A DNA stretch of 64,000 nucleotides, taken from contig NIVC01002432.1 in NCBI GenBank assembly GCA_002269645.1, positions 62,001 to 126,000 of the forward strand. Reading direction: 5' to 3'. How positions within the stretch are numbered: position 1 is the stretch's first letter; each line of letters opens with the position of its first letter. Both the position numbers and the translations under genes were made by a program. The notes below the pieces were generated by a model. It did not search any database. It was not told the DNA's origin and saw only the letters and a program-made list of their open reading frames with translations. The DNA comes from Macrostomum lignano. Its lineage: Eukaryota. Of the stretch, positions 1,853-61,760 are shown piece after piece.

Positions 1853-2348
1853 CTAACCCTATCCCTAGCCCTAACCCTAGCCCTAGCTCTAGCCTAGCAC
1901 TAGCCCTAACCCTTACCACAGCCCAACCCTAACCCTAATCCTAGCCCTAGCCCTAGCCCTAGCCCTAACTCTAGCCTAACCCTAGCCTAACTCTAGCCCT
2001 GACCCTAGCCCTAACTCTAACCCTAACCCTCTAGCCTAACCCTAGCCTAACCCTAGCCCTGACCCTAGCCCTGACCCTAGCCTTAACCCTAGACCTAACT
2101 CTAGCCTAACCCTAGCCCTAACCCTAGCCCTAGCCTTAACTCTAGCCTAACCCTAGCCTAACTCTAGCCCTGACCCTAGCCCTAACTCTAACCCTAACCC
2201 TCTAGCCTAACCCTAGCCCTAACCCTAGACCTAACTCTAGCCTAACCCTAGCCCTAACTCTGGCCTAGCACTAGCCCTAACCCTAACCCCAGCCCAACCC
2301 TAGCCCTAATCCTAGCCCTCGTCCTATTCCTAACCCTAGCCCTAGCCC
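1853..2348. repeat. Interstitial telomere-like degenerate array (CCCTAA/CCCTAG/CCTAG variants)
   Basis: About 500 bp of mixed aaccct/agccct/agcct units, with unique sequence on both sides. Confidence 0.9.
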
Positions 2349-2382
2349 TCAATTCTGAATATTGTGAAACAAATGCAAAGTA

Positions 2383-4279: not shown

Positions 4280-5509
4280 TCAGTCGATGACTGTCTCGGT
4301 CACGCGCGTCTCCATCATGGCTGTGGTCTCGCCCAGGGCGCAGCTGCTGGCGCCGAAGGTGGCGCCGCCGCCTCCACCGCCGGGCAGCAGCGGCAGCGGC
4401 TCGTAGCTGTTGGTCGGCCGTCCCGAGCCGCCGCCGGCATCGGCATCAGCAATTTCGCCTCCGTCAGCGCCGTTTCCACCGCCGGTGCCTCCGCCGTCTC
4501 CGCATCCGCCCAGACAGCCGGCCGGCAGGTGCTGGGCCAAGATGGCGCGCATGGAGGCGCGGAACGGTTCGTTGAGAAAGGCGTACAGGATGGGATTTCC
4601 GGCGCTGTTGACGTAGGCAAGCAGGGTGGTGAGGTGGCTGGCCACGGGCACCCAGCTCGGCGTCATGTCTTCGAGCTCCAGAGCGATGTTGACGTAGATC
4701 CAGTGTGGCAAGCAGCAGGCCAGGTAGAATGTGACCACGGCCACAACCAGGATGGTGACCTTCTCGAAGCGCTGCTGCGCCTGGGGCCCGGCGCTGCGAG
4801 CTCGCTTCATCAGCCAGAGCTTGCGCAGGATCAGAAAGTAGAAGGTGCACAGCAGCAGCCCGGGCAGCACGCAGCCGGTGACGAAGATGTACCTGCTGAA
4901 ATAGTACGGATCGGTGAACAGCTTCTTCAACAGGCCCTCTGAATGATTGACGGAGCCAGGCGGCAGGTGCTGGCAGCTGCGGCTGATCCAAACTCGGTCC
5001 TCCAGAGTCCCATTGTTCTCATGGTCCGCTGTTGCGTTTTCACCCGACGCTGGGATGATCCAAGTCTGGACGTAGGCGTTGAGGTAGATGGGGCTGACGA
5101 TCAGAGCGCTCAGCAGCCACATGCAGACTACAAGGATGACGGCGAATTTCTTGGTGCGGTAGCGGGCCGAGCTGAAAGGCGATACGACGGCCTTGAATCT
5201 GTCGAAGCTCATCGCCATGATGATGTAGATGCTCACGTTGGAGTTGGCGAAGTGCATCAGGAAATACAACTTGCAGCCGATGGTGCCCCAAACCCAGGAT
5301 TTGATGATGGACAGATGGATGAAGGGCGGAATGGATAGAAGATGCAGAGAGTCGGCAATGGCCAGGTTGATCAGGTAAATATTCGTGACGGTGTGGGCCG
5401 CCTTCAGCGAGCAGATCACGACCAGTACCAGCAGGTTGCCGGCGAAGCCGAGGACAAACAGCGCGCCAAGCACGGTGTCGTACACCGCCAGAGCAGCTGG
5501 TAGCAGCAT
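4280..5509 (-). CDS. Class A (rhodopsin-like) GPCR, somatostatin/opioid/allatostatin-C receptor-like, single exon, 409 aa
   Basis: Seven hydrophobic segments. Motifs: GN (TM1), TNIYLINLAIAD (TM2), SFDRF (TM3), W (TM4), CCLP (TM6), NSAGNPILY (TM7). ATG in gccATG context, with an in-frame TGA 11 codons upstream and no AG in between. Confidence 0.93.
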   Translation of the reverse strand: MLLPAALAVYDTVLGALFVLGFAGNLLVLVVICSLKAAHTVTNIYLINLAIADSLHLLSIPPFIHLSIIKSWVWGTIGCKLYFLMHFANSNVSIYIIMAMSFDRFKAVVSPFSSARYRTKKFAVILVVCMWLLSALIVSPIYLNAYVQTWIIPASGENATADHENNGTLEDRVWISRSCQHLPPGSVNHSEGLLKKLFTDPYYFSRYIFVTGCVLPGLLLCTFYFLILRKLWLMKRARSAGPQAQQRFEKVTILVVAVVTFYLACCLPHWIYVNIALELEDMTPSWVPVASHLTTLLAYVNSAGNPILYAFLNEPFRASMRAILAQHLPAGCLGGCGDGGGTGGGNGADGGEIADADAGGGSGRPTNSYEPLPLLPGGGGGGATFGASSCALGETTAMMETRVTETVID

Positions 5510-24907: not shown

Positions 24908-27900
24908 ATGAAGCGGGGCCACCATTATCTGGCTTCATCAGCAGAGTCAGCTTGCACAGGCTCCAGTGGACATAGTGGCAGTTACCAGCAGTCCAGCCAG
25001 TACAACAGCATCTTGACCCCGCTGCGCTCGGCTGCAACTGTTTCTAGTGGAACAGTGGGCTCGAGTAGAAGCAGCGTCCACCAACGTCCCCTGGAAAGAC
25101 ACGCCCATCCCAGCTTTGCTGCTGCGCCAGGGCCGCCACCTGCCGCAGCTGATGGCAGCATCTTCAAATTCATGCCATCTTCGGCTGCTACTGGTAATTG
25201 ATTTTTTAGCATGGCTGCCAGCCATACCTTGACACAGAACTAACAGCTTTAACGTTGCTAAATAGATGGAATTTTGTTATTAAATTTTTTATTAATAAAT
25301 AGAAGTACAACCGCAAGTTTCAATCAGATCTGGGGTCACTAAAACAGTTTATAGTGTCATATTACTAACCTCATTTAGAATCCCTCTTTTAACCGCACCT
25401 GATCGTCCCTCCGTAAGCCTCATTGAGTGTCCTATGATCAGCGTTAGTAGTCTTCCTTTAATCCGCACTGAGAGTTCTATGAAACCCAGTCCTATGAAGT
25501 GCTAGAGTCCTACGAATCCCATTGATTGTCATATATGATCCCATTGAGAGTCTTATGAACCCCATTGAGAGCTCCTCTATAAAACCCATTAAAATTACTT
25601 CTATAAGCCCCATTTAGATTCCCTCTATAAGCCAGATGGGAAGTAGCCCTCCATAACCTCATCGTGAGGCCTTGTCCATTGCGATTCCCTCTATAAACCC
25701 TCCCTTCAAAAATTGCGTAATTACCCTCCAGAGCTCATCGAAAGTGGCCCTCTTCAGCCACAAACCTAATCAGCTAACTGCAAGTGCCACTTGATTTCCT
25801 AGGTCGGCAAAGCTCGTCGCAGTCTCGTCAGAGCCAACAGAGGCGGACAATGCCTCTAACTGATCCCGCGCGCTGCATGGCAATTAGCGAAGGCCGCGGC
25901 ACCAAGTCACGTGACCTGGCTATCGCTGTACTGGACCTAGACTCGGATCGGTTGGACATTGTAAAACTGACTGACTGCCTGGCCTATCAGAAAACCCTCA
26001 GTTTGGTTTGTTGGTTTGATCCGGCGATTGTACTACTGCCTGACACGCTGTGCAACTCGGAAATTTACGAACTATTCCGCCTGCTGGCTGTGAAATTCCC
26101 CGCCTGCCGAATCGTGTCGGCCCCGAGAATACTGTTTAACGAAGCCGATGGACGAGCATTCGTTCGCCGAGTCTGCCACCCGGACAGTCAGCCAGTGCTG
26201 CAGCAGCTGCCAGTGTGCAATTTCATATTCTACTCCTGCGCTGTGCTGCAGGCATTCGCCGAACTTCAATTGGACACCGTGTTCGGCGATGCCAGCGTTC
26301 GACTGGCCTACAATGCCCATTCTGCGTCGCTCATTATGGACTACGGCACGGCTCGGTGCGTGTCTAATTTGGGCTCTTTTGTAAACCAATGAAATAATTT
26401 TTGATAAGCAGAAATGATACACGTATCCTGCTTACTTGTTGTTAGACGCCTTATAGAAATGCTTTGTTGGCAGGTCCAGCATCTATGCTGTACAGAAAAT
26501 TTGTGTTTAAGTTATTCACATGGTGCATTAGTCCTTTCAAATCCGTTGGTCAGCCACGCTGTCCATGAACACTTTAATTCGTGGGCAATGCCAGCCGGAG
26601 ATCTCAATTAATATCGTATTTAGAAATTGCCGAAGGTAGGCCCTGGTACCTATCTCGGGCCTTTTTGGTGTGTGGTATCGACGATCTGCGACATGTTGCT
26701 TGTCCAACAGCTAGAAGAGCCTGAATAAAATATCTTAATGAAGTTTAATAAATATTTAAATAAACATGACAATTTATGAGTATTATGCCTTACATTTATA
26801 ATATTAAAAGATTAAAGACATTGCTTGCTTGTATATATAAATGATGTATATTAGAAAATATCCATATGAAACAATAAGCAATATACGTTTAAAATATGTC
26901 TCGCTTGCCAATTGCAAATTAGCTAGGTTGCAATAAGGGGAAGGGAAGAGATCGCTGACTTGTAGTGGAGAAGTAAGAAGCCAAATGTGGCGTTCCAATT
27001 ATCATTAGGCAAATCATTAGGCACCCGTTATTTGCTGCAAATCATGTGTATATTTTTCTTTCTGTTGGTAGTTTCTAATCCCATCAGCTGGTTATATTTA
27101 ATTCATAATAAAGTTGTGTAAAACAGCTCATAAATAGAGACAGTCTGCAACACATAGGACCGGAGCGAACTCCGTCTGATCTGGCAAGCTATCTGAAATC
27201 ATTCAGCCGCAGTAGCGGCAGCAGAGGTAGCGCACCGAGCGGAGGCAACAGCGGTCTGCTAGCTTCGAGCCCGCGCTGTCCACCCCCTCGACCTCAACGA
27301 CGCGTGCGGCATCTGCCGCTTTTTCGGGGTGGTGGGCTCCGCTGGCGGCGTCGCGGGCTCGGTGGAGAGAAAGAGAGAGATTAGCGCAAAACAGCATGGC
27401 AACGTTTTGCGGCCTAACGCCAGAGTCAAGCGAGAACTAGAGTTTTTGAGATTTTCCTCTTTCTCACATTTTCTCACAGATCAGCGAAATATGCGCAGCT
27501 CTGCAGCAAGTGTGATCGATGGCACTTCCAATCAAACACTTAATTAATTTTTCCGTGTTATTTTCGCCGCTTTGCCACTTTTATTATCATATTTTTCTGC
27601 CTGTTAGCAATAGCTCGATGTGCTGCCCTGCTAAATTCCGATACTTCAGACAGCTCGAACTGGTGGAATCGCTGGATGGCCGCAGCGGAGGCCATCTGTT
27701 CGCCGTGCTCAACTACACTCTGACTGGTGGCGGGGCCCGGCTGCTCCGAATGTCGCTGCTGCAGCCGCTAACCGATTTGGATTCGATTCGCACTAGGCAG
27801 GACTGCGTAGAGGAGCTGCGAACGAATCCGGCTGTGCTACAGGTGAATGTCAAGGCGAAATCTAGCTCGCCTACTAACCCCAGTCTTCCCTTTCCCTATC

Positions 27901-30900
27901 CCCTATAGCTCCACGACTGCCGACTCTGACCCTAACCTAAACCCTAGACCTTAACCCTATTTTCGGCAGTTAACGTCGGGCTCCCTTCCTTCTCTTTGTA
28001 GACTGGCAGTTGGACTTCTCGTTCCCTTTTCCACCTGTTCACTGTCATTTTCTCATTTTTTATAAACAAATTTTAACTTTTTAATAGCTTTCTGTGAAAT
28101 TTCCTATTTAAAAAAAACTTTCAAAGACGGGACATTTTCTGTTTGTCACAGCGCTTTTATCTCCCCTACTGACAGTAGTGCAGATAGCAAAAGTCAATCC
28201 AATTTCTTTTTGCTCATATTTGTCTCAGTCATTGCGCGCCCAGTTGGCGGAGTTCTCGTACTTCAACTGCATCAACTCGCTGTGCCGACGCCGGTCTCGC
28301 ATGCCGCCGACAATCAACGTGGCTCGCACCCGAATTAACCGCATCATCTACCTGCACCACATGCTGGGCCGCCTGGACCCGCTCAGCCAGGCCCTCGCCC
28401 CCCTTCGCCATCCATTGTTCGCCAATTTCCGCCGGGCCCTGGACGAGCCAGCTCTGCCGCGGCTGCGCGCTCACTTCGAAGTGCTGGCCAACCCGGACAT
28501 GCGCTATTCGCGCGGCCGCTTAACTATGCACGCGCAGCGCATCGGCGCTGTCAGGCCCGGCGTCAACGACTCCCTAGATCGAGCGCGCCAGCTGTACGCC
28601 AGCCAGGTGGCGGCGGCGGAGCGGCTGGTTGCCGACCTGGCTGGCCGGCTGGGCCTCGAGGCCGCGCTTGCGCACTCAAAACTACGCGGCTTCCATGCGC
28701 AGTGCAGCCGGCAAGCGCTGGGCCGATTTCTCACCGAGCGGCGAAAGCAAATAGTTGAGTATTATCACAGCCTTGTTATAAATTTAATGAGATTAGCCCG
28801 ATTTAGTCAAGTAGCTCAGATTCAGTGAGAGTGGCTGCTCGGATTCAGTGAGAGTGACTGCTCAGATTCAGTGAGAGTGGCTGCTCGGATTCAGTGAGAG
28901 TGGCTGCTCGGATTCAGTGAGAGTGACTGCTCAGAGTCAGTGAGAGTGACTGTCAGATTCAGTGAGAGTGGCTGCTCAGATTCAGTGAGAGTGGCTGCTC
29001 AGATTCAGTGAGAGTGGCTGCTCAGATTCAGTGAGAGTGGCTGCTCAGATTCAGTGAAAGTGGCTGCTCAGATTCAGTGAGAGTGGCTGCTCAGATTCAG
29101 TGAGAGTGACTGCTCAGATTCAGTGAGAGTGGCTGCTCAGATTCAGTGAGAGTGGCTGCTCGGATTCAGTGAGAGTGACTGCTCAGAGTCAGTGAGAGTG
29201 ACTGTCAGATTCAGTGAGAGTGGCTGCTCAGATTCAGTGAGAGTGGCTGCTCAGATTCAGTGAGAGTGGCTGCTCAGATTCAGTGAAAGTGGCTGCTCAG
29301 ATTCAGTGAGAGTGGCTGCTCAGATTCAGTGAGAGTGACTGCTCAGATTCAGTGAGAGTGGCTGCTCAGAGTCAGTGAGAGTGACTGTCAGATTCAGTGA
29401 GAGTGGCTGCTCAGATTCAGTGAGAGTGGCTGCTCAGATTCAGTGAGAGTGGCTGCTCAGATTCAGTGAAAGTGGCTGCTCAGATTCAGTGAGAGTGGCT
29501 GCTCAGATTCAGTGAGAGTGACTGCTCAGATTCAGTGAGAGTGGCTGCTCAGAGTCAGTGAGAGTGGCTGCTCAGATTCAGTGAGAGTGGCTGCTCAGAG
29601 TCAGTGAGAGTGGCTGCTCGGATTCAGTGAGAGTGACTGCTCAGATTCAGTGAGAGTGGCTGCTCAGATTCAGTGAGAGTGGCTGCTCAGATTCAGTGAG
29701 AGTGGCTGCTCAGATTCAGTGAGAGTGGCTGCTCAGATTCAGTGAGAGTGACTGCTCAGATTCAGTGAGAGTGGCTGCTCACTCTCAGGATGTACAGCAG
29801 CCCTAGCTGCTCACTCACACAGGGTTTACAGCAGCCCTAGCTGCTCACTCACACAGGGTGTACAGCAGCCCTAGCTGCTCACTCACACAGGGTGTACAGC
29901 AGCCCTAGCTGCTCACTCACACAGGGTGTACAGCAGCCCTAGCTGCTCACTCACACAGGGTTTACAGCAGCCCTAGCTGCTCACTCACACAGGGTTTACA
30001 GCAGCCCTAGCTACTCACTCACACAGGGTGTACAGCAGCCCTAGCTGCTCACTCACACAGGGTGTACAGCAGCCCTAGCTACTCACTCACACAGGGTGTA
30101 CAGCAGCCCTAGCTGCTCACTCACACAGGGTGTACAGCAGCCCTAGCTACTCACTCTCAGGATGTACAGCAGCCCTAGCTGTCTCATTGTCAGTTATGAA
30201 TACACTCTGTGCTTTAGCTGTTGCCCTCATTTCTGCGGATCAGACGACAAGCCGCAAGCCCCAGACGCATAACAGCCTTGAACTGTAAGTGTCATGTAGA
30301 GGGTGAAAAGTCTTTAAACAAGAGCATCGTATACTATATCTTACTTTGTCTGAGCAGATCTTGGATAAGCCTATGCTAATTAATTCTCCATTTCATGTGA
30401 TCATGATACGGAAGCTAATCTGTTAGAGTAGGATTCTAATATAATTCACAGCTTCTGGTTAATTTGATTCCAATCACTTTAATGGCCTGTTTGCCTTGAC
30501 TAAATAAATTGATACGTTTTTTCTTCCACAGATAATCCGCTTAGCCCTCTTTGCTGCCGAGGTTGTTCTTTTGTTTTCAAAGACGAATCCAGGCCATCAA
30601 ATTATAAAAAAGCGATAAATAATTTTCTTGAAAAGAAATGGAAAGCTTTTAATCAATTTTTGCCTGCCGCTTCGATTATAGATTAACGGGCTCGGGTCTG
30701 AGCTTCCACCAAGCCTGGTTTCTGCCTAATGCAGTTGAACAATAAACGCAAAGTTTATAGGCCTCTCTTCCAGGTGGTTTACTTAGCGCTCAAATACAGG
30801 CTTGGCTGAAATCGTCTTTGTTGGCAAGCAGCCCGCTTGGGTGCCTTGAAATCAGCTGTAACAGCTTTAACTACTTTTCCTGCTTCTCAATAGGACGGCG

Positions 30901-32412
30901 ACGCTAATGACGATGAGACACTCAGCTCCCTACTGGTGAGTCCTCACGACTCCCACAATTCCTCTGGTGCTGCTGCCGCTGCTGTTTCCAATTCGTCTGC
31001 AAGCTCAGCCGGCAACGGCAACACCTACGGCAGCAGCAGCAGCTGGTGCAGCAGCGAGCTAGATTGCCAAGCACCTCAGCAGCGGCGCCGGGAGCAGCGG
31101 AGGCCGCCAACCCTGCTGGAGACAGCTAGCCGTCTGGCGCCTGAGCTTCTCAACCTGACAATTGGCCGCCGGTGCTGCAGCTTCACCACTAGCCAGCTGG
31201 CGGCTCTGAACGCCGACATCGAGGTCAGCGTCGAGAACGTCTACAAGCTGACGCTGCAGATATTTGAGCTGCTATTTGAGTCGCTGCCAGCCCACGCCAT
31301 GCAGCTATTCAAATGCATTGATGCCGTTAGCAATGCCGATCTGCTCAGCTCCCTAGCCCTGGCCAGCGTGCAGCGCGGCTACACCAGGCCGGAGTTCGGC
31401 GACCGGCTCGCCATTCGCTGCGGCCGCCACCCGCTGCCGCCGCCGCTCGCCTGTCCGACACGGCGCCGATCGGCCTGCGGCGGCGGGCCCGGGCGGCACG
31501 CGTTCGCCTCTCGGGCCTGCTCCCTGCTGGCCGTGTGCGGCGGCGCCGGCCAGGACAGGCGCGACTTCCTTCGGCAGATCGGCCTGATGCAGGTCATGGC
31601 CCAGGCCGGCTCGGACGTGCCCGCTTTGCAGGCCTCGTTCCGCCTGTGCGATCGGCTTATCGCACTGCGTCTGGCGCCGATCGACGAGGCGCCAGACTCC
31701 GCTGGGGGCGCCGCGGAAAGCGCGGATTGGAACACGGAAGGATCTGGCGCTCTATTCGATCAGCTGAGCGGTCTGTGCAACGGGCTCACTAGCAGGTGAG
31801 TTTTTGAAACAGGCCAATTCAAATTCATTTTTTGCAGTTCTGTTGAGTCTTCTCAAATCTGTCTTTCAATCGCTAATCTCCCTCGATTCTCCGGTTAGTT
31901 TGTCAGCATTTTAACCCTTCAGTGGGATCTGGTAAGCTCTTTGCATCTGAAGACTTAGAGACTTGACAGTTTAAACATAAATTTCATCTGCTTATCTATC
32001 CAACATCCCCAAAATACCGACCCTCTCTCAGAAGATCTCGAATTGCCACCGAAATTCCTATGGTACTCGTATTTGGCTTGCATTCCAGAATCCCTAAAAG
32101 TATTAGATTAGACCTATATCTATATATTCCCTAATTCCCTAAGACCCTAAATAAAAGTAATAACAAATAATCAAGACCCCTTGCACGGCCCCTCCCCGCT
32201 GCAGGTCTCTAGTTATCGTTGACGTCGGCAACCAGATGGACCTGCTCAGCGCCGCCATCCGCAAGCTGGCGTCCGCCACAGCCGACGCCTGGTGCAGCCG
32301 CGGCCGGGGCGCCTTCGCTTTCATCGGCTGCGACAGCTGGCCAAATCGTCGAAGCCGCGCTGCCGTCCGCGGCCTCGGCGTGCTGGAGTTCGGCGAGGCC
32401 AAGCGAGCCTAG
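24908..32412 (+). CDS. MSH4: MutS homologue, MSH4-like, with degenerate ATPase motifs and truncated C-terminus
   Basis: Exons 24908-25193 (Ser-rich N-terminus), 25803-26355, 27650-27842, 28229-~28753 (donor unresolved), 30894-31795, 32205-32412. Four of five junctions are GT-AG and phase-compatible. MSH4-like motifs: AISEGRG, LFAVLNYTLTGGGARLLR..LLQPL, AVRPGVND.LD.AR, YTRPEF..LAI..GRHP, LRQIGLMQVMAQAGS.VPA, SLVIVD. Confidence 0.8.
27203..27357 (-). CDS. Putative terminal exon of an unidentified antisense gene nested in MSH4-like intron 2
   Basis: GC3-rich frame RDAASGAHHPEKAADAARVVEVEGVDSAGSKLADRCCLRSVRYLCCRYCG*, preceded by a pyrimidine tract and AG. No upstream exon found. Confidence 0.35.
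28814..29782. repeat. 23-bp minisatellite (TTCAGTGAGAGTGGCTGCTCAGA), about 42 copies
   Basis: Direct tandem repetition inside an MSH4-like intron. Confidence 0.96.
29790..30182. repeat. 34-bp minisatellite (TGTACAGCAGCCCTAGCTGCTCACTCACACAGGG), about 11 copies
   Basis: Direct tandem repetition abutting the 23-bp array and sharing its gctgctca core. Confidence 0.95.
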
Positions 32413-32896
32413 GAGCCTACAATTGGCACCTTTAGCCTGATCCCTATAGCTGCAAAATGATTTTCTTGGGACAATAGCGAATTCTGTAATTATTCTGCAC
32501 CTTTATTCGTTCTTGGCCATATAATTGCGAGATTCTTGATCAATTTACTGGCTTTGAATGTGCGTTATTAGAGAGCCTATTCGAAAGTACGAGTATTGTA
32601 GCTAATTGAAAGCAGATATTGCCGAGTTAATTATACACGAAGCTGAGCTCTAGCATGCTACTGTTCGCTTATTATTTATTCATCTTTTTATACGGATGGA
32701 TGACAAAGAACGAGACATGAGTCCATTATATAAACACTGCTTCAAGTTTTGTTAAAATTTGATTAACTGTGCGGCATTAAATCATTTCCGAGGTTCATGG
32801 ATTGATAAGATCGACTTGAGAGAATTTTTGAGAAAACTATTTCAATCTGAGTGTTTGGGATGCGGACTGAGGATCCTTGAAGTGGTCAATAGATCA

Positions 32897-33520
32897 AACT
32901 GAGGAGGATCTTTAAGGTGGATAGATACAGATCAATCTGAGGAGGATCTTTGAGGTGGATAGATCAATCTGAGGATCTTTGAGGTGGATAGATCAATCTG
33001 AGGATCTGTGAGGTGGATAGATCAATCTGAGGATCTGTGAGGTGGATAGATCAATCTGAGGATCTGTGAGGTGGATAGATCAATCTGAGGATCTGTGAGG
33101 TGGATAGATCAATCTGAGGATCTGTGAGGTGGATAGATAAATCTGAGGATCTGTGAGGTGGATAGATCAAGCTGAGGATCTGTGAGGTGGATAGATCAAT
33201 CTGAGGATCTGTGAGGTGGATAGATCAATCTGAGGATCTGTGAGGTGGATAGATCAATCTGAGGATCTGTGAGGTGGATAGATCAATCTGAGGATCTGTG
33301 AGGTGGATAGATCAATCTGAGGATCTGTGAGGTGGATAGATAAATCTGAGGATCTGTGAGGTGGATAGATCAAGCTGAGGATCTGTGAGGTGGATAGATC
33401 AATCTGAGGATCTGTGAGGTGGATAGATCAATCTGAGGATCTGTGAGGTGGATAGATAAATCTGAGGATCTGTGAGGTGGATAGATCAATCTGAGGATCT
33501 GTGAGGTGGATAGATCAATC
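32897..33520. repeat. 29-bp minisatellite (GAGGATCTGTGAGGTGGATAGATCAATCT), about 20 copies
   Basis: Direct tandem repetition. Confidence 0.96.
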
Positions 33521-37659: not shown

Positions 37660-38909
37660 GACTTTTGAAAAACTTTTGGTAAGTTGCGGATTAAAATAAA
37701 GCACTTTACTGTCGGTGACAGAAACTCACAGAGGACACAGACATACGTGTATGTAGCTCGTACAAAATCTTTCCCTCTATGATCTTTCCGACTGGAATGG
37801 GGATACAGGGTTGAGCAGAAATTTTTCTATGGCCCGAATTTGACCCATCCAACTGAAACGGAGAGTGGCGAATATTTCCACCGTCTTGAAGAGGTTTTGA
37901 GCAAATCAAGTTGATCGAGCCATTTGGCAACAGTAGATTTGGTCTTGTCCATAGACACAGACGGAGAGGGCAATCAAGCAGGTAATTCTGATCTTTACTG
38001 CATGGAAGTCTACTACCAAATCTACTGTACTGCTGCCAACTGGGAATTCACAACTTGTTGGCTGAACTTGGCTGAGAAAAGCAATATATATAACAATAAT
38101 ATTAATTATTTTAAATAAGAATTCCATGACAATAAAGTGCTACGGATCCTCAATGTAAGTTTCTGTGTTGCAAAGCTGTTTAACTGGATGCTGATTAACT
38201 ATCGCGGTTTTAGTCCGTGAAGTTTGAATAAAAATGACTGTCAGAGCTTTGCTTATTGTCCAGATTTATAGTTTAGGACATCTATGAACTGCTGACTGAC
38301 TGACTGACTGTCATTGGCTGCTCAAATATCAGGATGAGCTTTGCAAGTCGTTGAGTTAGTAGATAAAACTGCTCACTCCTCCCCTCAAATTCTTATCGCT
38401 TACTATTCCTCGGTCAAGCAGCCAAGAATCCCAAGGATCCTCCTCACTCTACCGCTTGACATTTGTTGTCAAAAAAGCTTGGCTCAAGTAAGTTTCTATT
38501 AATGCTTACTGAGTACGCTCGTATATATAGATTCGTACAATATTCTCTTGTAAAGTTGTTTTAATTGCATCAGCGTCTTCTGCTGAATAGTTTAATTAGT
38601 ATGCTAATCGCGGCTTTGCAATATCAAAGAAACAATTTATTTTAGCATAATGTCGATCTCCTAGCTCATCGTATCACGCATGTCTTTAGTGGTATCTCCC
38701 AGGGGAAGGCAATCTCTTGGGTGATATTTCTCAATAGAGTGATTTCTTGGGTTGATACCTCTCACTCCGTACATGTAAGTCTTGCTCTACACGTAAACAG
38801 AGCTGGGGGGGGGGGCTGAAAATCTTTACGTTATGAAATTGCCAAATGACACCTTGTGTCTCAGGTAGCTGGTATTAGAGTTCGCACCACCTGCCCTCCG
38901 CTCCCAGCC

Positions 38910-40052
38910 ATGCAATCCGATCAGGACCTGCTGCTCTACACTCGGCACTGGGAATTCCGGGCAGCCAAGTGGCTCTGCTGGGCCGGCAGTCCGCTGCTCC
39001 TCCTGGTCGGGTCCGTTGCCAACTGCCTGTCTGTCTGGATACTGAAGAACCACGTGAAAAGAAATGGCACGCACAATTACCTGTTAGTGCTGAGCATAGC
39101 GGACCAGGTGACCCTGTTGTCTGGCCTGTTCAAGTCCTGGATCTCCTGCCTGCTTGGCTACGATTGCTCCCTCATCAGCGTGGAGCTGTGCATCGGCGGC
39201 AACTTCCTGTCCACCATGGCCACCTACTTCAGCGTGTTTCTCATCGCGGCCGTAACTCTCGAACGGGTGTTCGTCCTGCTGTCCCAGCTGCCGACGCCCA
39301 ACACGGCGGTTGAGCGCACCCGTCGCATCATCGGCGCCCTCCTGATTGTCTGCCTGCTGCTCAACGCCCACTGGTTCTTCGTGCTGGACGTCTACGACTT
39401 TCACTGGCGGCCGGGGTCGAACCGGACCCATCGAATCTGCGACCTGCGCCCGAGATTCGCCTCGTTGAAGCAGCCGCTCGCCTGGCTGGATTTTTCCCTC
39501 TACTCCCTGATTCCCATCTCCATTCTGGTGGTGTGCAATATCCTCATCATCCGCAAGCTGTACATCTCCAAGAAGCTCTACTCCGGCCAGTTGAACGCCG
39601 CCAGCGAGTCGGTGCGGCTCCGGCCGGTGGCGGCAGCCGACACGCAGACTGCTGGCGGCTCCACCTGCGTGCTGGCAGCGTCCGAGAGGCCGCAGCGCTC
39701 GCTGAACTCAATCACCAACGCTAATCGGCGCCCACTGTTCAGCTACCAGTCGTCTGGTCTCGGCCGGAGCGTCAACCAGGTGACGCTGATGCTCTTGCTG
39801 GTGTCGTTCTTCTTCATCTTCACCTCGCTGCCCATCACTGTGCTAAAGGTGCTCAGCTCCCTGTCGTCCGTGATCAACTTCGAGACGAACAACGACACTG
39901 TGTTCTATGCTCGCTACCAGCTCGGCCTGGCCTGTACAGAGCTGCTGATGTACGCCAATCATTCTGCTAATTTCTTTCTCTACTGCCTGGTGGCTAAGAA
40001 ATTCCGACGTGAATTTGCTCGCCGCTTTCGGGCCGCCTGTTGGTGCGGCTGA
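38910..40052 (+). CDS. Class A GPCR, FMRFamide/sex-peptide/TRH-receptor-like orphan, single coding exon, 380 aa
   Basis: GSVAN (TM1), YLLVLSIAD (TM2), TLERV (TM3), HWFF (TM4), LIPISILVVCN (TM5), FTSLP (TM6), NHSANFFLY (TM7), KKFRREF (helix 8). ATG in gccATG context. Confidence 0.9.
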   Translation: MQSDQDLLLYTRHWEFRAAKWLCWAGSPLLLLVGSVANCLSVWILKNHVKRNGTHNYLLVLSIADQVTLLSGLFKSWISCLLGYDCSLISVELCIGGNFLSTMATYFSVFLIAAVTLERVFVLLSQLPTPNTAVERTRRIIGALLIVCLLLNAHWFFVLDVYDFHWRPGSNRTHRICDLRPRFASLKQPLAWLDFSLYSLIPISILVVCNILIIRKLYISKKLYSGQLNAASESVRLRPVAAADTQTAGGSTCVLAASERPQRSLNSITNANRRPLFSYQSSGLGRSVNQVTLMLLLVSFFFIFTSLPITVLKVLSSLSSVINFETNNDTVFYARYQLGLACTELLMYANHSANFFLYCLVAKKFRREFARRFRAACWCG

Positions 40053-44680: not shown

Positions 44681-45017
44681 GAATACCAGGGAAGGGCAGG
44701 GCTACGAGTAAGTCAGTTCGATGGGAGGGCAGGCAAGACGAACTTCTTATTTCAGGGCCTGAGTTGCTACGAGCGTAGTGCTCTTGCGGAAGCCTGGCTC
44801 ACCCAGCTTGGTAAGTGAGCTTGCAAAAATAGCATCAAAAGAAGAATGGCGGCTTCGAAGTCCATTTAATGAAATGACTCGTGGCTTTTTTCAGCACTCA
44901 GAAGGTCTCTTTTGCTCTTAGAAATCGAAGTTACAATTACACTCGTATACATTGGTGCAGTATGCCTTTTAAAGGCTTATGGATACTTAAGACAGGAGTT
45001 TTTTTGCTGTACTAAAT

Positions 45018-45825
<808 letters not shown>

Positions 45826-47560: not shown

Positions 47561-50500
47561 ATGGGCAACACCTGCGGGAACGGCGCGGCGGCGAGGCGGA
47601 GAGTCGGCCTGATGGAGCGGCACACTTGTGAGATACTGGAGACCGAATTTGGGGCTGCTTTGACTCCACTTGTCTGATTGATGGCTGCGGATTAACTACT
47701 GTTCACGTTGAGGGTTGTGGATTATTTGGGTTGTGGATTATTTGGGTTGTGGATTATTTGGATTATGGATTATTTGGGTTGTGGATTATTTGGATTGTGG
47801 ATTATTAGGGTTGTGGATTATTTGGTTGTGGATTATTTGGGTTGTGGATTATTTGGGTTGTGGATTATTTGGGTTGTGGATTATTTGGGTTGTGGATTAT
47901 TTGGATTATGGATTATTTGGGTTGTGGATTATTTGGATTGTGGATTATTAGGGTTGTGGATTATTTGGTTGTGGATTATTTGGGTTGTGGATTATTTGGG
48001 TTGTGGATTATTTGGGTTGTGGATTATTTGGGTTGTGGATTATTTGGGTTGTGGATTATTTGGGTTGTGGATTATTTGGGTTGTGGATTATTTGGGTTGT
48101 GGATTATTTGGGTTGTGGATTATTTGGGTTGTGGATTATTTGGGTTGTGGATTATTTGGGTTGTGGATTATTTGGGTTGTGGATTATTTGGGTTGTGGAT
48201 TATTTGGGTTGTGGATTATTTGGGTTGTGGATTATTTGGGTTGTGGATTATTTGGGTTGTGGATTATTTGGGTTGTGGATTATTTGGGTTGTGGATTATT
48301 TGGGTTGTGGATTATTTGGGTTGTGGATTATTTGGGTTGTGGATTATTTGGGTTGTGGATTATTTGGGTTGTGGATTATTTGGGTTGTGGATTATTTGGG
48401 TTGTGGATTATTTGGGTTGTGGATTATTTGGGTTGTGGATTATTTGGGTTGTGGATTATTTGGGTTGTGGATTATTTGGGTTGTGGATTATTTGGGTTGT
48501 GGAGTAAATGGGTTGTGGAGCGTTTGGGTTGTGGACTATTTGGGTTTTGGATTATTTGACTTGTGGATTATTTGGGTTGTGGATTATTTGGGTTGTGGAT
48601 TATTTGGGTTGTGGATTATTTGGGTTGTGGATTATTTGGGTTGTGGAGCGTTTGGGTTGTGGATTATTTGGGTTGTGGATTATTTGAATTGTGGATTATT
48701 TGGGTTGTGGATTATTTGGGTTGTGGATTACTTGGGTTGTGGATTATTTGGGTTGTGGAGTAAATGGGTTGTGGAGCGTTTGGGTTGTGGACTATTTGGG
48801 TTTTGGATTATTTGACTTGTGGATTATTTGAGTTGTGGATTATTTGGGTTGTGGATTATTTGAGGCGTGGATTGAGGTTAATTTGGAGCTTGGATTATGG
48901 ATAATTTGGAGTTTGGGTTGCAGTTTATTTGGGCTTTGGGTTTGTGGATTGTTTTGTGCATTGCAAGGGAGCAACACCGAACATCTGAAGAGTCAGATTA
49001 CAGTTACACTTTCAGTTCTAAAGCCAGCCATCTCTCTTTCTTTTCAAACAAAAATCGCAAGTGCGCCTTTTGAGTCCTCAAGCGCCCTGCCGCCCTGCCA
49101 ATTGCAGTGTCAGAGGAGCAGATGGCTAAGCTGGAGGCCATGTTCAAGAAGGCGGCCAAGGGCAAACGCTATATTAGCTTCAAGGTGAGCTGTTGGCTTG
49201 TAAGAGAGACAAATAAAAATAGGCTGCAGCCTCGTGTTTGCATTCCGACATCTCAAAGCAAGGGTCTAATTTTCCTCGCTTCGAGCAAGAAAGCCAAGCA
49301 AAAACTATCTCCTCTGCATGCTTACAGAAAATAGCTAAAAGTTCAAGCGCAGCAGCTCATTGATAAAAATAAAATTCGACGTGAAACGTTCTAAGATAAT
49401 TTGCGATACGGCCTACTAGTATCAAGTAGGTCAGTAGTATCATAAGGGCATGTAGCTATATTCTTAACTTCGTTTGCAGATGTTTCAATCTCCCCTCATG
49501 CTCACCCTTCACCTCAATGCAGGAGTTTCTCGAGCTCTACCCGGAGTCCAAGCTGCAGAGGGACGAGTCGGACATGCGCTCCGTGTACTACGCCTTCGCC
49601 GACTCCAGGACCAACAGCCTTAAGTTCGACGGGTTCGTCATGCTGATGTTGCTCAGCGACAGAGTCGGCAGCCTCGACGAATCCGAGAGAATGCATGGTA
49701 ATTCGGTTGGGGGTTGTGGTTGATGGGGTTGTAGCTGATGGAGTTGTAGCTGATGGGGGTGTTGCTGATGGGGTTGTGACTGATGGGGTGTTGCTGATGG
49801 GGTTGTGGCTGATGGGGTTGTGACTGATGGGGGTGTTGCTGATGGGGTTGTGGCTGATGGGGTTGCGGCTGATGGGGGTGTGACTGGTGAGGTTGTGGCT
49901 GATGGTGCTGTGGTTGATGGGGTTGTGACTGTTGGGGTTGCGGTTGATGGGGTTGTGGCTGATGGGGTTGTGGCTGATGGTGCTGTGGTTGATGGGGTTG
50001 TGGCTGTTGGGGTTGTGGCTGATGGTGCTGTGGTTGATGGGGTTGTGACTGTTGGGGTTGCGGTTGATGGGGTTGTGGCTGATGGGGTTGTGGCTGATGG
50101 TGCTGTGGCTGATGGGGTTGTGGCTGATGGGGTTGTGGCTGACGGGGTTGTGGCTGATGACGTGGTGGCTCACCCTTAGTGCTCACTCCGCGCTCCCCTC
50201 CCGCAGCCCTGTTCAGCGTGATGGATCCGGCCGGATGCAACAGCGTCCCAAAAGCCGAATTTCGTCGTTTCGTGCGCAGCTTCGTGGTGGACGAGTTGGA
50301 AGATCAAGAAGGTGAAGGCGACGAAGGGGGCGCTGCTGCGGTAGATGTGGCGGTCTCAGTGGAGGGCAGCAACGGCTCTGCCAAGCGCGCCAATGGCGAT
50401 GCCCTCGACGGGACGGTGAGGCTGTGTTCCTATTTCAATATTTTGAGCTCCACAACCAGCTCCACAATTATACTGTTTTGTTCAATTTCAAATTTCAGCC

Positions 50501-58800: not shown

Positions 58801-61760
58801 CGTGATGGCAATCCAAGCATCGCCCGTGAAGCGGTGCACCCTGGCGGAGATCTACCAGTACCTGCAGGACAATTTCCCATTTTTCCGTGGCCAGTACCAG
58901 GGCTGGAAGAACTCTGTGCGGCATAATTTATCGCTGAACGAATGCTTCATCAAACTGCCGAAAGGTTTGCCGGGCACAGTTTTCGCTCGATAATTAATAG
59001 TAAATTGCAGGGACTTAGTGAAGTTTATTTTGCCAAGGCGCCTCAGGGTTTGCGGTACCCCCCGCTGACCCCCGAATCCACTACCTTCCCCCTCAGGTGC
59101 TGCTAGGGGGCGTCCCAAGCCATTTTTCGGTGGGAGAATTTTCCCACAATAATAGAATTGTTGGCGCGACCAAGGCGCAGCGGGAAGGCGCCCTTGACTT
59201 CCTGGCGCTTTAATCAGGGCTCTGCCTCAGTGGTCTGTTGCGCATTTGTCAATCAGTCTCTTCCCGATCTCTATGCAGAATTTGGACGCCATTTAGTAAT
59301 TATAATCTTATTATCAGTCAATTTTGTGTTTATACCAGATTAGTCAACTGTAAAGTAGAATTCGTTTGATAAAAGGTGTCCCATGCTAAATAAATATTGA
59401 ATTTTCCAACTTAACTTAACCTAGAAGCACGCATTTCAATCCTTAGCGGGGGAATCAAGCCATTGAAGACTTGCTTTTTATTGTCTATGACCCAACCTAA
59501 ATCCCTAGGTCTTATATCCTATGTAGAGCAGTATACTACAGTATTTAAAACCCCCAACACTTCATATCTCCGACACTTCATATCTCCGATACTTCATGTC
59601 TCCGACACTTCAAGTCTCCGATACTTCATGTCTCCGACACTTAATGTCTCCGATACTTCATGTCTCCGACACTTAATGTCTCCGACACTTCATGTCTCCG
59701 ACACTTCATGTCTCCGATATTTCATGTCTCCGATACTTCATGTCTCCGACACTTCATGTCTCCGATACTTCATGTCTCCGACACTTAATGTCTCCGACAC
59801 TTCATGTCTCCGACACTTCATGTCTCCGACACTTCATATCTCCGATATTTCATGTCTCCGATACTTCATGTCTCCGATACTTCATGTCTCCGACACTTCA
59901 TGTCTCCGATACTTCATGTCTCCGACACTTCATGTCTCCGACACTTCATGTCTCCGACACTTCATGTCTCCGATACTTCATGTCTCCGACACTTAATGTC
60001 TCCGACACTTCATGTCTCCGACACTTCATATCTCCGATACTTCATGCCTCCGACACTTCATATCTCCGACACTTCAAGTCTCCGATATTTCATGTCACCG
60101 ATACTTCATGTCTCCGACACTTCATGTCTCTGACACTTCATATCTCCGACACTTCATGTCTCCGACACTTAATGCCTCCGACACTTCATATCTCCGACAC
60201 TTCATGCCTCCGACACTTCATGCCTCCGACACTTCATGCCTCCGACACTTCATGCCTCCGACACTTCATATCTCCGACCCTTCATGCCTCCGACACTTCA
60301 TATCTCCGATACTTCATGCCTCCGACACTTCATATCTCCGACACTTCAAGTCTCCGATATTTCATGTCACCGATACTTCATGTCTCCGACACTTCATGTC
60401 TCCGACACTTCATATCTCCGACACTTCATGTCTCCGACACTTCATGTCTCCGATACTTCATGTCTCCGATACTTCATGTCTCCGACACTTCATGTCTCCG
60501 ACACTTCATGTCTCCGATACTTCATGTCTCCGATACTTCATGTCTCCGACACTTCATGTCTCCGACACTTCATGTCTCCGACACTTCATGCCTCCGACAC
60601 TTCATATCTCCGACCCTTCATGCCTCCGACACTTCATATCTCCGATACTTCATGTCTCCGACACTTCAAGTCTCCGATACTTCATGTCTCCGATACTTCA
60701 TGTCTTCGATACTTCATGTCTCCGATACTTCATGTCTCCGATACTTCATGTCTCCGATACTTCATGTCTTCGATACTTCATGTCTCCGATACTTCATGTC
60801 TCCGATACTTCATGTCTCCGACACTTCATGTCTCCGACACTTCATGTCTCCGACACTTCATATCTCCGATACCTGATATCATACTTAGTTGTCCTGTTCA
60901 TGCAGGCAGATTGTCTAAGGGTGGTACAGTGGCGAGTCTGCTGCATTGCTGACATGTGCTTGTACACCACCTTAACTGTACACCGGTACACACACACTGC
61001 AACTCATGCAGGCATCGGCCGGCCAGGCAAGGGCCACTACTGGACGCTCGACCAGCAAGCCGAGTTCATGTTCGAGGAGGGCAGCTACCGCCGGAGACCG
61101 CGCGGCTTTCGCCGGAAATCAGGCGGCGGCGGCGGCAGCCACCAGCAGCACGCGGCAGCTGCCAAGTCAGCGGTTGCAGCTGCTGCAGCCGCTGCCGCCG
61201 CAGCTGCAGCGGTGCCAAGCCCGGAAGCGCAGGCAGCAGCAGGCTGCTCCGGACTGGCTTCAACATCAGCTTCAGCGCCAACTTCTACACCGGGCATGAT
61301 TAATGCTAATGAGCATCCAGCAGATAGCTTTCCACTGCATCACCAGCATCACTGGTACCATCAGCAGCATCAGCATCTGCAGCAGCAGCTTCAGTACGAT
61401 AGCGGCGACGCGCTGATTGATCATCTAGGCGGCTGTCAGTCGTATCCAGCTGCCGCGGCTGCGGCTGCTGCGGCGGCCGCCGGTTATCCGGGCTATCACC
61501 AGCAGGTGCATCAGCAGCAGGTGTACCAGCACCAGCAGCACGAGCAGCCGCAATTCTCCAGTTGGAGTTTCCCGTCGCTAGGCTACGGACCAGCAGCTGC
61601 CTATCAGCAGCATTCGATTGCGGCGGCTTCGGCACCGGCCTGCGGGACCAGTGTCTGCTACGACGGCCCGCAGCAGCCGCCGCTGACTGGAAGCTCAGCT
61701 GTCACCATCGATGAGGCCTACAGCGGCCGACGACTACCGACCTATCCGGCGATCACGTGA
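55817..61760 (+). CDS. FOXF: Forkhead box F transcription factor, 4 exons, 436 aa
   Basis: Exons 55817-55952, 56053-56259, 58746-58964, 61012-61760. All introns are phase-1 GT-AG (1311 nt). Domain [16 protein letters not shown]...[21 protein letters not shown]|[11 protein letters not shown]...[18 protein letters not shown] is diagnostic of FoxF. C-terminus is Ala/Gln/His-rich. Confidence 0.93.
56285..56670. repeat. AG-rich ~17-bp minisatellite, FoxF intron 2
   Basis: Repeating agagtagagagggagggc with variants. Confidence 0.9.
57187..57580. repeat. ~32-bp minisatellite (GCAGTTTGTGAACCCCCATACCCCAGCTAAAG), FoxF intron 2
   Basis: Direct tandem repetition, about 12 copies. Confidence 0.92.
58255..58632. 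repeat. AG-rich minisatellite (GGGAGATAGGGGAGAGAA-like), FoxF intron 2
   Basis: Purine tract with ~18-bp periodicity. Confidence 0.9.
59560..60872. repeat. 16-bp minisatellite (ACTTCATGTCTCCGAC/T), about 80 copies, FoxF intron 3
   Basis: Direct tandem repetition. Source of the artefactual [16 protein letters not shown] ORFs. Confidence 0.97.

What the first reader, a model, noticed from the sequence alone, without database searches (positions are those of the whole stretch)
24908..32412. MSH4-like gene with an open frame but all ATPase motifs eroded: candidate MutS pseudo-ATPase
Seen: the reconstructed exons are stop-free and, apart from one unresolved junction, splice in phase. The Walker A position reads LLAVCGGAGQDRRDFLRQ (~31524-31580), where MSH4 has IITGPNMSGKSTYLKQ. 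The signature position reads GALFDQL instead of STFM.EM. Walker B reads SLVIVDVG (32206-32229) instead of SLILIDELG. The FATH motif is FAFIG. The protein stops at 32412, before the C-terminal dimerisation region. Known: MSH4-MSH5 (MutSgamma) needs ATP binding to form sliding clamps on recombination intermediates. Inference: selective loss of nucleotide-binding residues with flanking structure kept (GRHP, LRQIGLMQVMAQAG, SFRL) looks like a retained, catalytically dead paralogue (scaffold, decoy or DNA-structure binder) rather than random pseudogene decay.
Basis: partly seen in the sequence, partly recalled or inferred. Interest (0 to 1): 0.8.

Follow-up and report, generated by a model that had tools for sequence, protein, structure and literature searches.

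The report
Flatworm MSH4 with a dead ATPase
This is the meiotic crossover gene MSH4 of the flatworm Macrostomum lignano: it is intact, its gene model comes from RNA-seq data, and its DNA-clamp part is under selection, but its ATP-binding motor has lost every nucleotide-binding motif and its tail, the extreme end of an erosion seen in every flatworm MSH4 examined (trematodes and cestodes).

Summary
Six GT-AG exons (24908-32412, + strand) splice in phase into an 888-codon open frame. This frame matches the RNA-seq-derived GenBank model PAA57927 of Macrostomum lignano. The protein is an MSH4: its best hits are named MSH4, and it falls inside the flatworm MSH4 clade.

Walker A, the STF signature, Walker B/GRGT and the TH histidine are all lost. 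The protein ends about 25 residues after the TH position and has no helix-turn-helix tail. No hidden exon in the window restores these features.

- It behaves as the flatworm orthologue, not a side paralogue. No closer or canonical copy appeared in an exhaustive search, but the genome itself could not be scanned.
- Every trematode and cestode MSH4 whose model covers these motifs has already lost the Walker B glutamate, the GRGT arginine and the TH histidine, while keeping GK[ST] (GRT in Calicophoron), the signature (SSF/STF) and the tail. M. lignano is the extreme case.
- Across three near-identical genomic copies, the core (aa 116-520) shows 11 synonymous and 1 non-synonymous change. The ATPase relic shows 3 and 8, which looks neutral.

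Best reading: a conserved clamp/lever subunit carrying a nucleotide-blind relic domain, probably still partnered with MSH5. MSH5 could not be examined.

The parts
24908..25193 (+). Exon 1: ATG and low-complexity, predicted disordered N-terminus (aa 1-96)
   Evidence: matches GenBank CDS. AlphaFold pLDDT below 30. dN/dS about 1.
25803..26355 (+). Exon 2: MSH4 N-terminal EGRG motif and connector (MutS domain II equivalent)
   Evidence: tblastn hits to 13 MSH4 proteins, E 1e-7 to 5e-17. Alignments.
27650..27842 (+). Exon 3: start of MutS domain III (QLELVESLDG...LLRMSLLQPL)
   Evidence: tblastn identity 43-56% to MSH4 proteins. Pfam MutS_III.
28229..28753 (+). Exon 4: lever and start of clamp (domains III/IV)
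   Evidence: tblastn E down to 6e-19. Eight synonymous and one non-synonymous difference (R/Q510) among the three copies in this exon.
28814..30186 (.). Two tandem arrays inside intron 4 (23 bp x 42, then 34 bp x 12)
   Evidence: TRF. Intron 4 is 2140 bp here and 3780 and 4115 bp in the other copies.
30894..31121 (+). First part of exon 5: lineage-specific low-complexity insert of about 76 aa in the clamp region; contains an unused internal GTGAGT at 30936
   Evidence: Absent from all other MSH4 proteins. pLDDT about 26. Carries an in-frame 6-bp indel between copies. GTGAGT position.
31122..31795 (+). Rest of exon 5: end of clamp/lever plus first half of the ATPase-derived domain V (RPEFGD, GRHP, degenerate P-loop, conserved LRQIGLMQVMAQAGSDVPA, SFRL)
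   Evidence: tblastn E 1e-14 to 2e-20. BLASTP 1e-24.
31539..31565 (+). Walker A relic GGAGQDRRD in place of GPNMSGK[ST]T
31746..31766 (+). Signature relic GALFDQL in place of STFxxEM, preceded by a lineage-specific loop
   Evidence: The exact register is ambiguous (one search aligns ADW..E instead).
32205..32412 (+). Exon 6: Walker B strand SLVIVD followed by VGNQMD (no DE-GRGT), FAFIG in place of FATH, and TAG stop at 32410-32412 about 25 aa later; no helix-turn-helix
   Evidence: Not detected by tblastn with MSH4 queries, and no helix-turn-helix exon downstream.
32776..32781 (+). ATTAAA, the only poly(A)-signal-like hexamer within 600 bp after the stop (weak)

Best explanation
This is the Macrostomum lignano orthologue of MSH4, the MutS-gamma subunit that with MSH5 encircles meiotic recombination intermediates. 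It is present in at least three near-identical genomic copies because of the species' recent genome duplication. Shown: the connector, lever and clamp (aa 116-520) are well conserved and under strong purifying selection. Shown: the ABC-ATPase module has become a nucleotide-blind relic. Its beta-strand and helix core is still recognisable, every ATP-contacting motif is replaced, loops are inserted, and the chain is truncated before the helix-turn-helix. Inferred: the protein still works as the structural half of a clamp with MSH5 and contributes DNA-junction embracing and partner or scaffold contacts. Any ATP-driven switching would then be left to MSH5 alone or abandoned. Inferred: this is the end point of a trend. 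Trematode and cestode MSH4 had already lost the catalytic glutamate, the GRGT arginine and the switch histidine, which predicts ATP binding without hydrolysis. The Macrostomum lineage then also lost ATP binding, the trans-acting signature and the tail.
For: Identity and expression: the spliced frame equals RNA-seq-derived GenBank models in three copies. The GenBank annotation of Mlig_3_7 was built from genome-guided transcript assemblies (PMC5730564). MSH4 assignment: the best hits are named MSH4. It clusters with flatworm MSH4. The Schistosoma mansoni member's best non-flatworm hits are all MSH4. Pfam finds no MutS domain I. Fold: the AlphaFold model matches MutS/MSH2/MSH3 over about 800 columns, E 1e-29, and the domain-V strand and helix order is retained. 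Domain-specific erosion: Pfam MutS_III scores 91 bits, higher than in parasitic flatworms (about 70). MutS_V falls from 239 bits in Lingula to 137-154 in trematodes and cestodes and to 24 here, below the cut-off of 30.2. Conserved columns kept: 23/25 in domains III/IV and 10/14 in II, but 3/15 motif columns in domain V. Selection: core 11 synonymous to 1 non-synonymous; whole-gene dN/dS 0.37 (p = 0.006). Window versus L001 has one in-frame indel in 2667 bp of exon against 12 in 2698 bp of intron (p = 0.002). [quoted passage not shown]
Against: MSH5 of M. lignano was not found or examined, so the partner model is inference. Yeast msh4 Walker A G639A is null (PMC2928781), so loss of ATP binding by MSH4 is not tolerated everywhere. 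The signature motif, which in MutS-type dimers completes the partner's site in trans (my own knowledge of MutS structures), is also lost, as is the helix-turn-helix. Both argue against a normally closing ATPase dimer. The relic domain shows a neutral-looking 8:3 non-synonymous to synonymous ratio since the duplication. One copy (L002) carries two 1-bp deletions in exon 5. No tissue-expression data were found.
Confidence: 0.55

Rival explanations
1. The whole gene is on its way out. M. lignano no longer uses MutS-gamma, and the open frame and transcript are leftovers of a gene decaying from its 3' end.
For: The ATPase relic evolves at the neutral ratio, 8 non-synonymous to 3 synonymous. The last exon has no detectable homology. 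The chain is truncated. One copy has two frameshifts. Independent MSH4/MSH5 pseudogenisation is documented in fungi (bioRxiv 10.1101/750497).
Against: The core has 11 synonymous to 1 non-synonymous change (binomial p = 0.0002 for window versus L001). Exon indels are depleted relative to introns (p = 0.002). Conserved columns in domains III/IV are kept 23/25. MutS_III scores better than in parasitic flatworms, which keep a complete protein. Both L002 deletions lie in short homopolymers (CC, GGG) and may be long-read errors.
Confidence: 0.13
2. One reading: a catalytically dead extra paralogue (decoy or scaffold) that coexists with a canonical MSH4 elsewhere in the genome.
For: M. lignano is a hidden polyploid with many duplicated genes (PMC5704211, PMC7013459; PMC5730564). 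I could not scan the whole genome.
Against: All three copies found carry the same eroded motifs. The exhaustive HMMER search found nothing between 100% and about 31% identity. Among the 134 representatives of at least 600 aa, the flatworm clade held only the M. lignano pair plus five trematode or cestode proteins. The two compositionally most M. lignano-like canonical candidates come from other assemblies. Parasitic flatworm orthologues already share part of the erosion.
Confidence: 0.1
3. Neofunctionalised MSH4. The conserved connector, lever and clamp are kept for a role that no longer involves MSH5 or ATP, for example as an ATP-independent junction or axis-binding scaffold, perhaps linked to meiosis in a neopolyploid.
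For: Strong constraint on the core together with relaxed constraint on the dimerising ATPase/helix-turn-helix part. A lineage-specific 76-aa insert lies in the clamp.
Against: There is no positive evidence for any new partner or activity. The graded series from canonical MSH4 through trematode and cestode MSH4 to M. lignano suggests continuity of the MutS-gamma role.
Confidence: 0.17
4. Assembly or annotation artefact: the true transcript uses other exons, or the sequence contains errors that hide canonical motifs.
For: The assembly is long-read based, and one copy has homopolymer indels.
Against: The same motif sequences occur in three independently assembled copies. The gene models derive from RNA-seq data. 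No alternative MSH4-like exon exists in the window. The motif changes are multi-residue substitutions, not frameshifts.
Confidence: 0.03

Closest known systems
MSH4 (MutS homolog 4), subunit of the MutS-gamma (MSH4-MSH5) meiotic crossover complex
   Same: Best similarity and tree placement. No mismatch-binding domain I. N-terminal EGRG motif. Collinear connector, lever, clamp and ATPase-domain order. Full-length MutS fold in the model.
   Different: No Walker A lysine or serine, no STF signature, no Walker B glutamate, no GRGT, no TH histidine and no C-terminal helix-turn-helix. Extra loops and a 76-aa insert. Pfam MutS_V falls below its threshold.
MSH4 of parasitic flatworms (Schistosoma, Opisthorchis, Clonorchis, Paragonimus, Calicophoron, Anoplocephala, Schistocephalus)
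   Same: Same clade. Shares loss of the Walker B glutamate, the GRGT arginine and the TH histidine, and has low-complexity inserts in the lever/clamp region.
   Different: They keep GK[ST] (GRT in Calicophoron), the SSF/STF signature and the helix-turn-helix tail, and still score 137-154 bits on MutS_V. They are therefore predicted to bind ATP without hydrolysing it, whereas the M. lignano protein should not bind it at all.
Asymmetric ABC-type ATPase dimers with one degenerate nucleotide site (heterodimeric ABC transporters; the functional asymmetry of MSH2-MSH6 and yeast Msh4-Msh5)
   Same: One subunit of an obligate dimer loses the catalytic residues (Walker B glutamate, switch histidine) while the partner presumably stays competent. 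The yeast msh4 hydrolysis mutant is viable whereas the msh5 mutant is null (PMC2928781).
   Different: In those systems the degenerate subunit still binds nucleotide and keeps the signature that completes the partner's site. Here both are gone. Resemblance in how it works is inferred, and the partner was not examined.
Pseudogenised MSH4/MSH5 in lineages that dropped the pathway (Eurotiomycete fungi, bioRxiv 10.1101/750497; loss in Drosophila, from my own knowledge)
   Same: Erosion of a meiosis-specific MutS gene.
   Different: Here the frame is intact in two of the three copies found, a gene model derived from RNA-seq data exists, and the core is under strong purifying selection.

Membership tests
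MSH4 (MutS-gamma subunit) | Closest relatives are MSH4 orthologues, and the protein is placed inside the MSH4 clade | tested here: met
   The best hits at E 1e-55 to 1e-60 are named MSH4. A neighbour-joining tree puts it with flatworm MSH4. The Schistosoma member hits MSH4 of Lingula, Owenia, Asterias and Hydra at 1e-115 to 1e-123. BLASTP against Lingula MSH4 gives 2e-58. No explicit tree with labelled MSH2/3/5/6 was built. PDB MSH2/3/6 hits are far weaker.
MSH4 (MutS-gamma subunit) | Lacks mismatch-binding domain I; has connector, lever and clamp (domains II-IV) | tested here: met
   No MutS_I hit, and MutS_III at 2e-25. Domains II and IV are not called by Pfam, but they align with MSH4 and are folded in the model, which matches MutS over about 800 columns.
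MSH4 (MutS-gamma subunit) | Functional ABC ATPase domain V: Walker A GxxxxGK[ST], STF signature, Walker B DE, GRGT, TH | tested here: not met
   The sequences are GGAGQDRRD, GALFDQL, DVGNQMD and FAFIG. MutS_V scores 23.7 bits against a cut-off of 30.2.
MSH4 (MutS-gamma subunit) | C-terminal helix-turn-helix dimerisation region | tested here: not met
   The stop comes about 25 residues after the TH position. About 120 residues present in other MSH4 proteins are missing. No downstream exon encodes them.
MSH4 (MutS-gamma subunit) | Heterodimer with MSH5; meiotic expression; needed for class I crossovers | not testable with these tools
   M. lignano MSH5 could not be retrieved. No expression tables mention the gene.
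Unitary or duplicated pseudogene | Frame disruptions, no transcript, dN/dS near 1 over the whole gene | tested here: not met
   The window copy and L001 are intact and have gene models derived from RNA-seq data. Whole-gene dN/dS is 0.37 and core 0.10. Copy L002 has two 1-bp deletions whose reality is uncertain. Domain V alone is compatible with neutrality.
Degenerate-site ABC dimer (works like; not a membership claim) | The degenerate subunit loses catalytic residues but keeps nucleotide binding and the signature that serves the partner's site | tested here: not met
   This is met by trematode and cestode MSH4, where GK[ST] and SSF/STF are kept and E and H are lost. It is not met by M. lignano, where the P-loop and signature are lost as well.

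The most novel reading that the evidence does not exclude
Flatworms run MutS-gamma with a single working nucleotide site. MSH4 hydrolysis was abandoned before trematodes and cestodes diverged, and perhaps in the rhabditophoran ancestor. In Macrostomum MSH4 has become a nucleotide-free, tail-less structural half-clamp that is still required for crossing over. That would make it a natural separation-of-function allele showing that MSH4 ATP binding and the helix-turn-helix are dispensable for MutS-gamma function in an animal.
Probability: 0.35. Interest if true: 0.75.

Novelty: new variant of a known kind. Interest (0 to 1): 0.6.

Why it matters
MutS-gamma is thought to need ATP binding by its subunits to turn into a sliding clamp that stabilises crossover intermediates. 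How the two nucleotide sites share that work is still debated from yeast, mouse and human mutants. A graded natural series is an evolutionary experiment on exactly that question: canonical MSH4, then hydrolysis-dead but ATP-binding MSH4 in trematodes and cestodes, then nucleotide-blind, truncated MSH4 in M. lignano. M. lignano allows transgenesis and RNAi, so the prediction can be tested directly: the conserved clamp part is essential for chiasmata and the relic domain is not. It also matters for annotation. The gene is deposited only as 'hypothetical protein / MutS core domain-containing', and Pfam no longer recognises its ATPase domain. I found no paper describing this erosion in flatworms.

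Tried and rejected
(1) A word-index homology search with the full protein and with a flatworm MSH4 alignment returned almost only GC-rich bacterial MutS. Low-complexity words seem to saturate the candidate list. The results were useless for finding a second M. lignano MSH4 or MSH5.

(2) I looked for a canonical M. lignano MSH4 among the 150 best representatives by amino-acid composition. The two most similar candidates (P0110, P0045) come from other assemblies.

(3) I searched supplementary tables of four M. lignano transcriptome papers for Mlig008393, Mlig032607, MSH4 and MSH5, with no hits. Tissue expression therefore remains unknown.

The 10-row alignment gave a usable but only moderately confident model (pLDDT 62).

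(5) I considered alternative splicing as a rescue. An internal GTGAGT lies at 30936, but the gene models derived from RNA-seq data read through it and no alternative MSH4-like exon exists.

(6) I considered that the top hit, Frankliniella at 284 bits, signals a special relationship. It does not: that gene model contains a duplicated MSH4 segment.

Full report
WHAT IS THERE

The window is eukaryotic. On the + strand, six exons (24908-25193, 25803-26355, 27650-27842, 28229-28753, 30894-31795, 32205-32412) all have GT-AG borders and join in phase. They give an 888-codon frame that ends in TAG at 32410-32412.

A protein search returned a 100% match, PAA57927, 'hypothetical protein BOX15_Mlig032607g1, partial [Macrostomum lignano]'. 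[quoted passage not shown]

The same 90% cluster holds two more genomic copies from other contigs of assembly GCA_002269645.1. My exon coordinates transferred to those contigs reproduce their deposited CDSs exactly. The GenBank annotation of that assembly was built from genome-guided RNA-seq transcript assemblies, not from ab initio prediction (PMC5730564). A spliced gene model with this structure therefore derives from RNA-seq data. I found no tissue-expression data.

FAMILY ASSIGNMENT

- Pfam finds MutS_III (2e-25). MutS_V appears only as a sub-threshold fragment (23.7 bits against a cut-off of 30.2, covering 37 of 188 profile positions). No MutS_I is found.
- An exhaustive HMMER search of 1.8 billion representatives gave 141 hits at or below 1e-30. 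The named hits among the best are MSH4 of lamprey, locust, ant, barnacle and Nematostella.
- In a neighbour-joining tree of 134 representatives, the M. lignano pair falls in one clade with five proteins. These turned out to be MSH4 of Paragonimus, Calicophoron, Schistosoma mansoni, Anoplocephala and Schistocephalus.
- In the reverse direction, the best non-flatworm hits of the Schistosoma mansoni protein are all annotated MSH4: Holothuria, Lingula, Owenia, Asterias and Hydra, at 1e-115 to 1e-123.
- BLASTP against Lingula MSH4 gives 2e-58 (30% over 392 aa, core) and 1e-24 (29% over 233 aa, clamp end plus first half of domain V).
- An AlphaFold model (pLDDT 62, pTM 0.59) matches MutS, MSH2 and MSH3 over about 800 columns at E 1e-29.

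This is the flatworm MSH4 orthologue.

THE MOTIFS

Alignments place the sequences as follows:
- GGAGQDRRD (31539-31565) at Walker A (GPNMSGKST).
- GALFDQL (31746-31766) at the STFxxEM signature. The register is somewhat ambiguous.
- SLVIVD-VGNQMD (32206-32241) at SLIIID-ELGRGT.
- FAFIG (32314-32328) at FATH.

The protein stops about 25 residues later. Other MSH4 proteins continue for about 120 residues, including the helix-turn-helix.

Among 123 homologues that contain this region, only the M. lignano protein truly lacks GK[ST]. tblastn with 16 MSH4 proteins against the whole window found no other MSH4-like segment. So there is no alternative exon that restores GKS or DE, and no helix-turn-helix exon downstream.

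IS THE LOSS SELECTIVE?

Yes, over the long term. I took the 83 alignment columns that are at least 80% conserved in non-flatworm homologues.
- M. lignano keeps 10/14 in domain II and 23/25 in domains III/IV.
- In domain V it keeps 22/29 non-motif columns but only 3/15 columns that belong to the nucleotide-binding motifs (Fisher p = 0.0009).

Pfam scores tell the same story. MutS_III scores 91 bits, better than the parasitic flatworms (about 70). MutS_V scores 239 bits in Lingula, 137-154 in trematodes and cestodes, and 24 in M. lignano. This is domain-specific erosion, not generally fast evolution.

THE CLADE CONTEXT CHANGES THE STORY

Every trematode and cestode MSH4 whose model covers the motif shows the same substitutions; a few models have gaps at individual motifs:
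- The Walker B glutamate is replaced: D-G in trematodes, D-D in cestodes.
- GRGT is replaced by CQST, CQNT, CHNT, CQGT, GLST or GLCT.
- TH is replaced by TN, TQ, SS or TA.
- In trematodes GRHP is replaced by GRNI.

These proteins keep GK[ST] (GRT in Calicophoron), the SSF/STF signature and the helix-turn-helix. Loss of the catalytic residues is therefore normal for flatworm MSH4. M. lignano adds loss of the P-loop, the signature and the tail.

Whether the shared part is ancestral to Rhabditophora or convergent cannot be decided without planarians, polyclads and other macrostomids.

PRESENT-DAY SELECTION

M. lignano is a hidden polyploid (PMC5704211, PMC7013459), and the sequenced line carries extra chromosomes (PMC5730564). 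Window positions 15-41.6 kb are collinear with the two other contigs at 96-98.6% identity.

Between the window copy and L001:
- Whole-gene dN/dS is 0.37 (p = 0.006) and 0.10 for aa 116-545 (p = 0.0002).
- Exons carry one in-frame indel in 2667 bp. Introns carry 12 in 2698 bp (p = 0.002).

Over all three copies:
- The core (aa 116-520) has 11 synonymous and 1 non-synonymous change.
- The ATPase-derived part (aa 613-888) has 3 and 8, which is the neutral expectation.
- The two differ with Fisher p = 0.003.

In the two intact copies, the non-synonymous changes of the relic fall in lineage-specific loops and in the last exon. The numbers are small.

Copy L002 has two 1-bp deletions in exon 5, both in short homopolymers. 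They could be real or long-read errors.

INTERPRETATION

The clamp, lever and connector of MSH4 are being maintained. The ATPase module is a relic whose core fold is still recognisable but which cannot bind nucleotide and now seems largely unconstrained.

The most economical mechanism is an inference: M. lignano MSH4 serves as a structural half-clamp for MSH5. This fits known asymmetry. In yeast, a predicted hydrolysis mutation in Msh4 is harmless while the matched Msh5 mutation is null, and human MSH4 is reported to bind ATP poorly (PMC2928781). A mouse Msh5 ATPase-domain mutation abolishes all crossovers (PMC6553527 abstract).

Three points count against an easy fit.
- The yeast Msh4 Walker A mutant is null.
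- M. lignano MSH4 has also lost the signature that should complete the partner's site.
- It has lost the helix-turn-helix.

A conventional ATP-closed dimer therefore seems unlikely. MSH5 could not be examined.

The rivals remain open at lower probability: gene decay in progress, a dead paralogue beside an undetected canonical copy, and a new MSH5-independent role.

NOVELTY

The gene is deposited without a functional name. I found no paper that mentions MSH4 or MSH5 in Macrostomum, or the motif erosion in flatworm MSH4. I rate it a new variant of a known kind, of moderate to good interest.

Noticed in passing
window 1853-2349; also about 27900-27965 (MSH4 intron 3): A degenerate interstitial telomere-like array: (CTAACC)n, a rotation of CCCTAA, about 84 units mixed with CTAGCC variants. 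A short telomere-like patch also lies inside intron 3. This may be relevant to the chromosome fusions described for this species.
   Followed up: no
window 28814-29781 and 29774-30186: Two abutting tandem arrays (23 bp x 42, 34 bp x 12) fill intron 4. The array length differs strongly between the three gene copies: intron 4 is 2140, 3780 and 4115 bp.
   Followed up: partly
window 32942-33520: A 29-bp x 20 tandem array lies about 530 bp 3' of the MSH4 stop. It is also length-variable between copies.
   Followed up: no
L002 17938-18837 (NIVC01000995): The third gene copy has two 1-bp deletions in exon 5 (CDS positions 1752 and 2177, in CC and GGG runs), so GenBank annotates only 606 aa. It is either a real pseudogenised copy or a long-read homopolymer error.
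   Followed up: partly
window 15048-41647 versus L001 and L002: About 26 kb around the gene is collinear with two other contigs of the same assembly at 96-98.6% identity. This is the expected signature of the recent genome duplication or extra chromosomes of the DV1 line.
   Followed up: partly
window 4280-5509 (-) and 38856-40052 (+): Two single-exon ORFs encode rhodopsin-family GPCRs (Pfam 7tm_1, 8.6e-42 and 6e-16).
   Followed up: no
window 45017-45825, 47712-48873, 59557-60869 and many others: The tandem-repeat load is very high: (TAC)270, 16 bp x 73, 16 bp x 82 and about 20 further arrays. Several long 'ORFs' in these regions are repeat translations, for example 59692-60876, which gives a spurious Phage_ORF5 hit.
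   Followed up: no
flatworm MSH4 proteins P0206-P0221, P0036, P0183: In domain III the otherwise invariant glutamate of the L-E-L motif (aa 283 here) is kept in M. lignano. It is replaced by G, R or N in the five trematode and cestode representatives examined. These proteins also carry long low-complexity inserts in the lever.
   Followed up: no
P0027/P0177 (Frankliniella occidentalis): The best non-self hit owes its high score to a gene model that contains a duplicated MSH4 segment. This is a tandem duplication or a mis-assembly.
   Followed up: no
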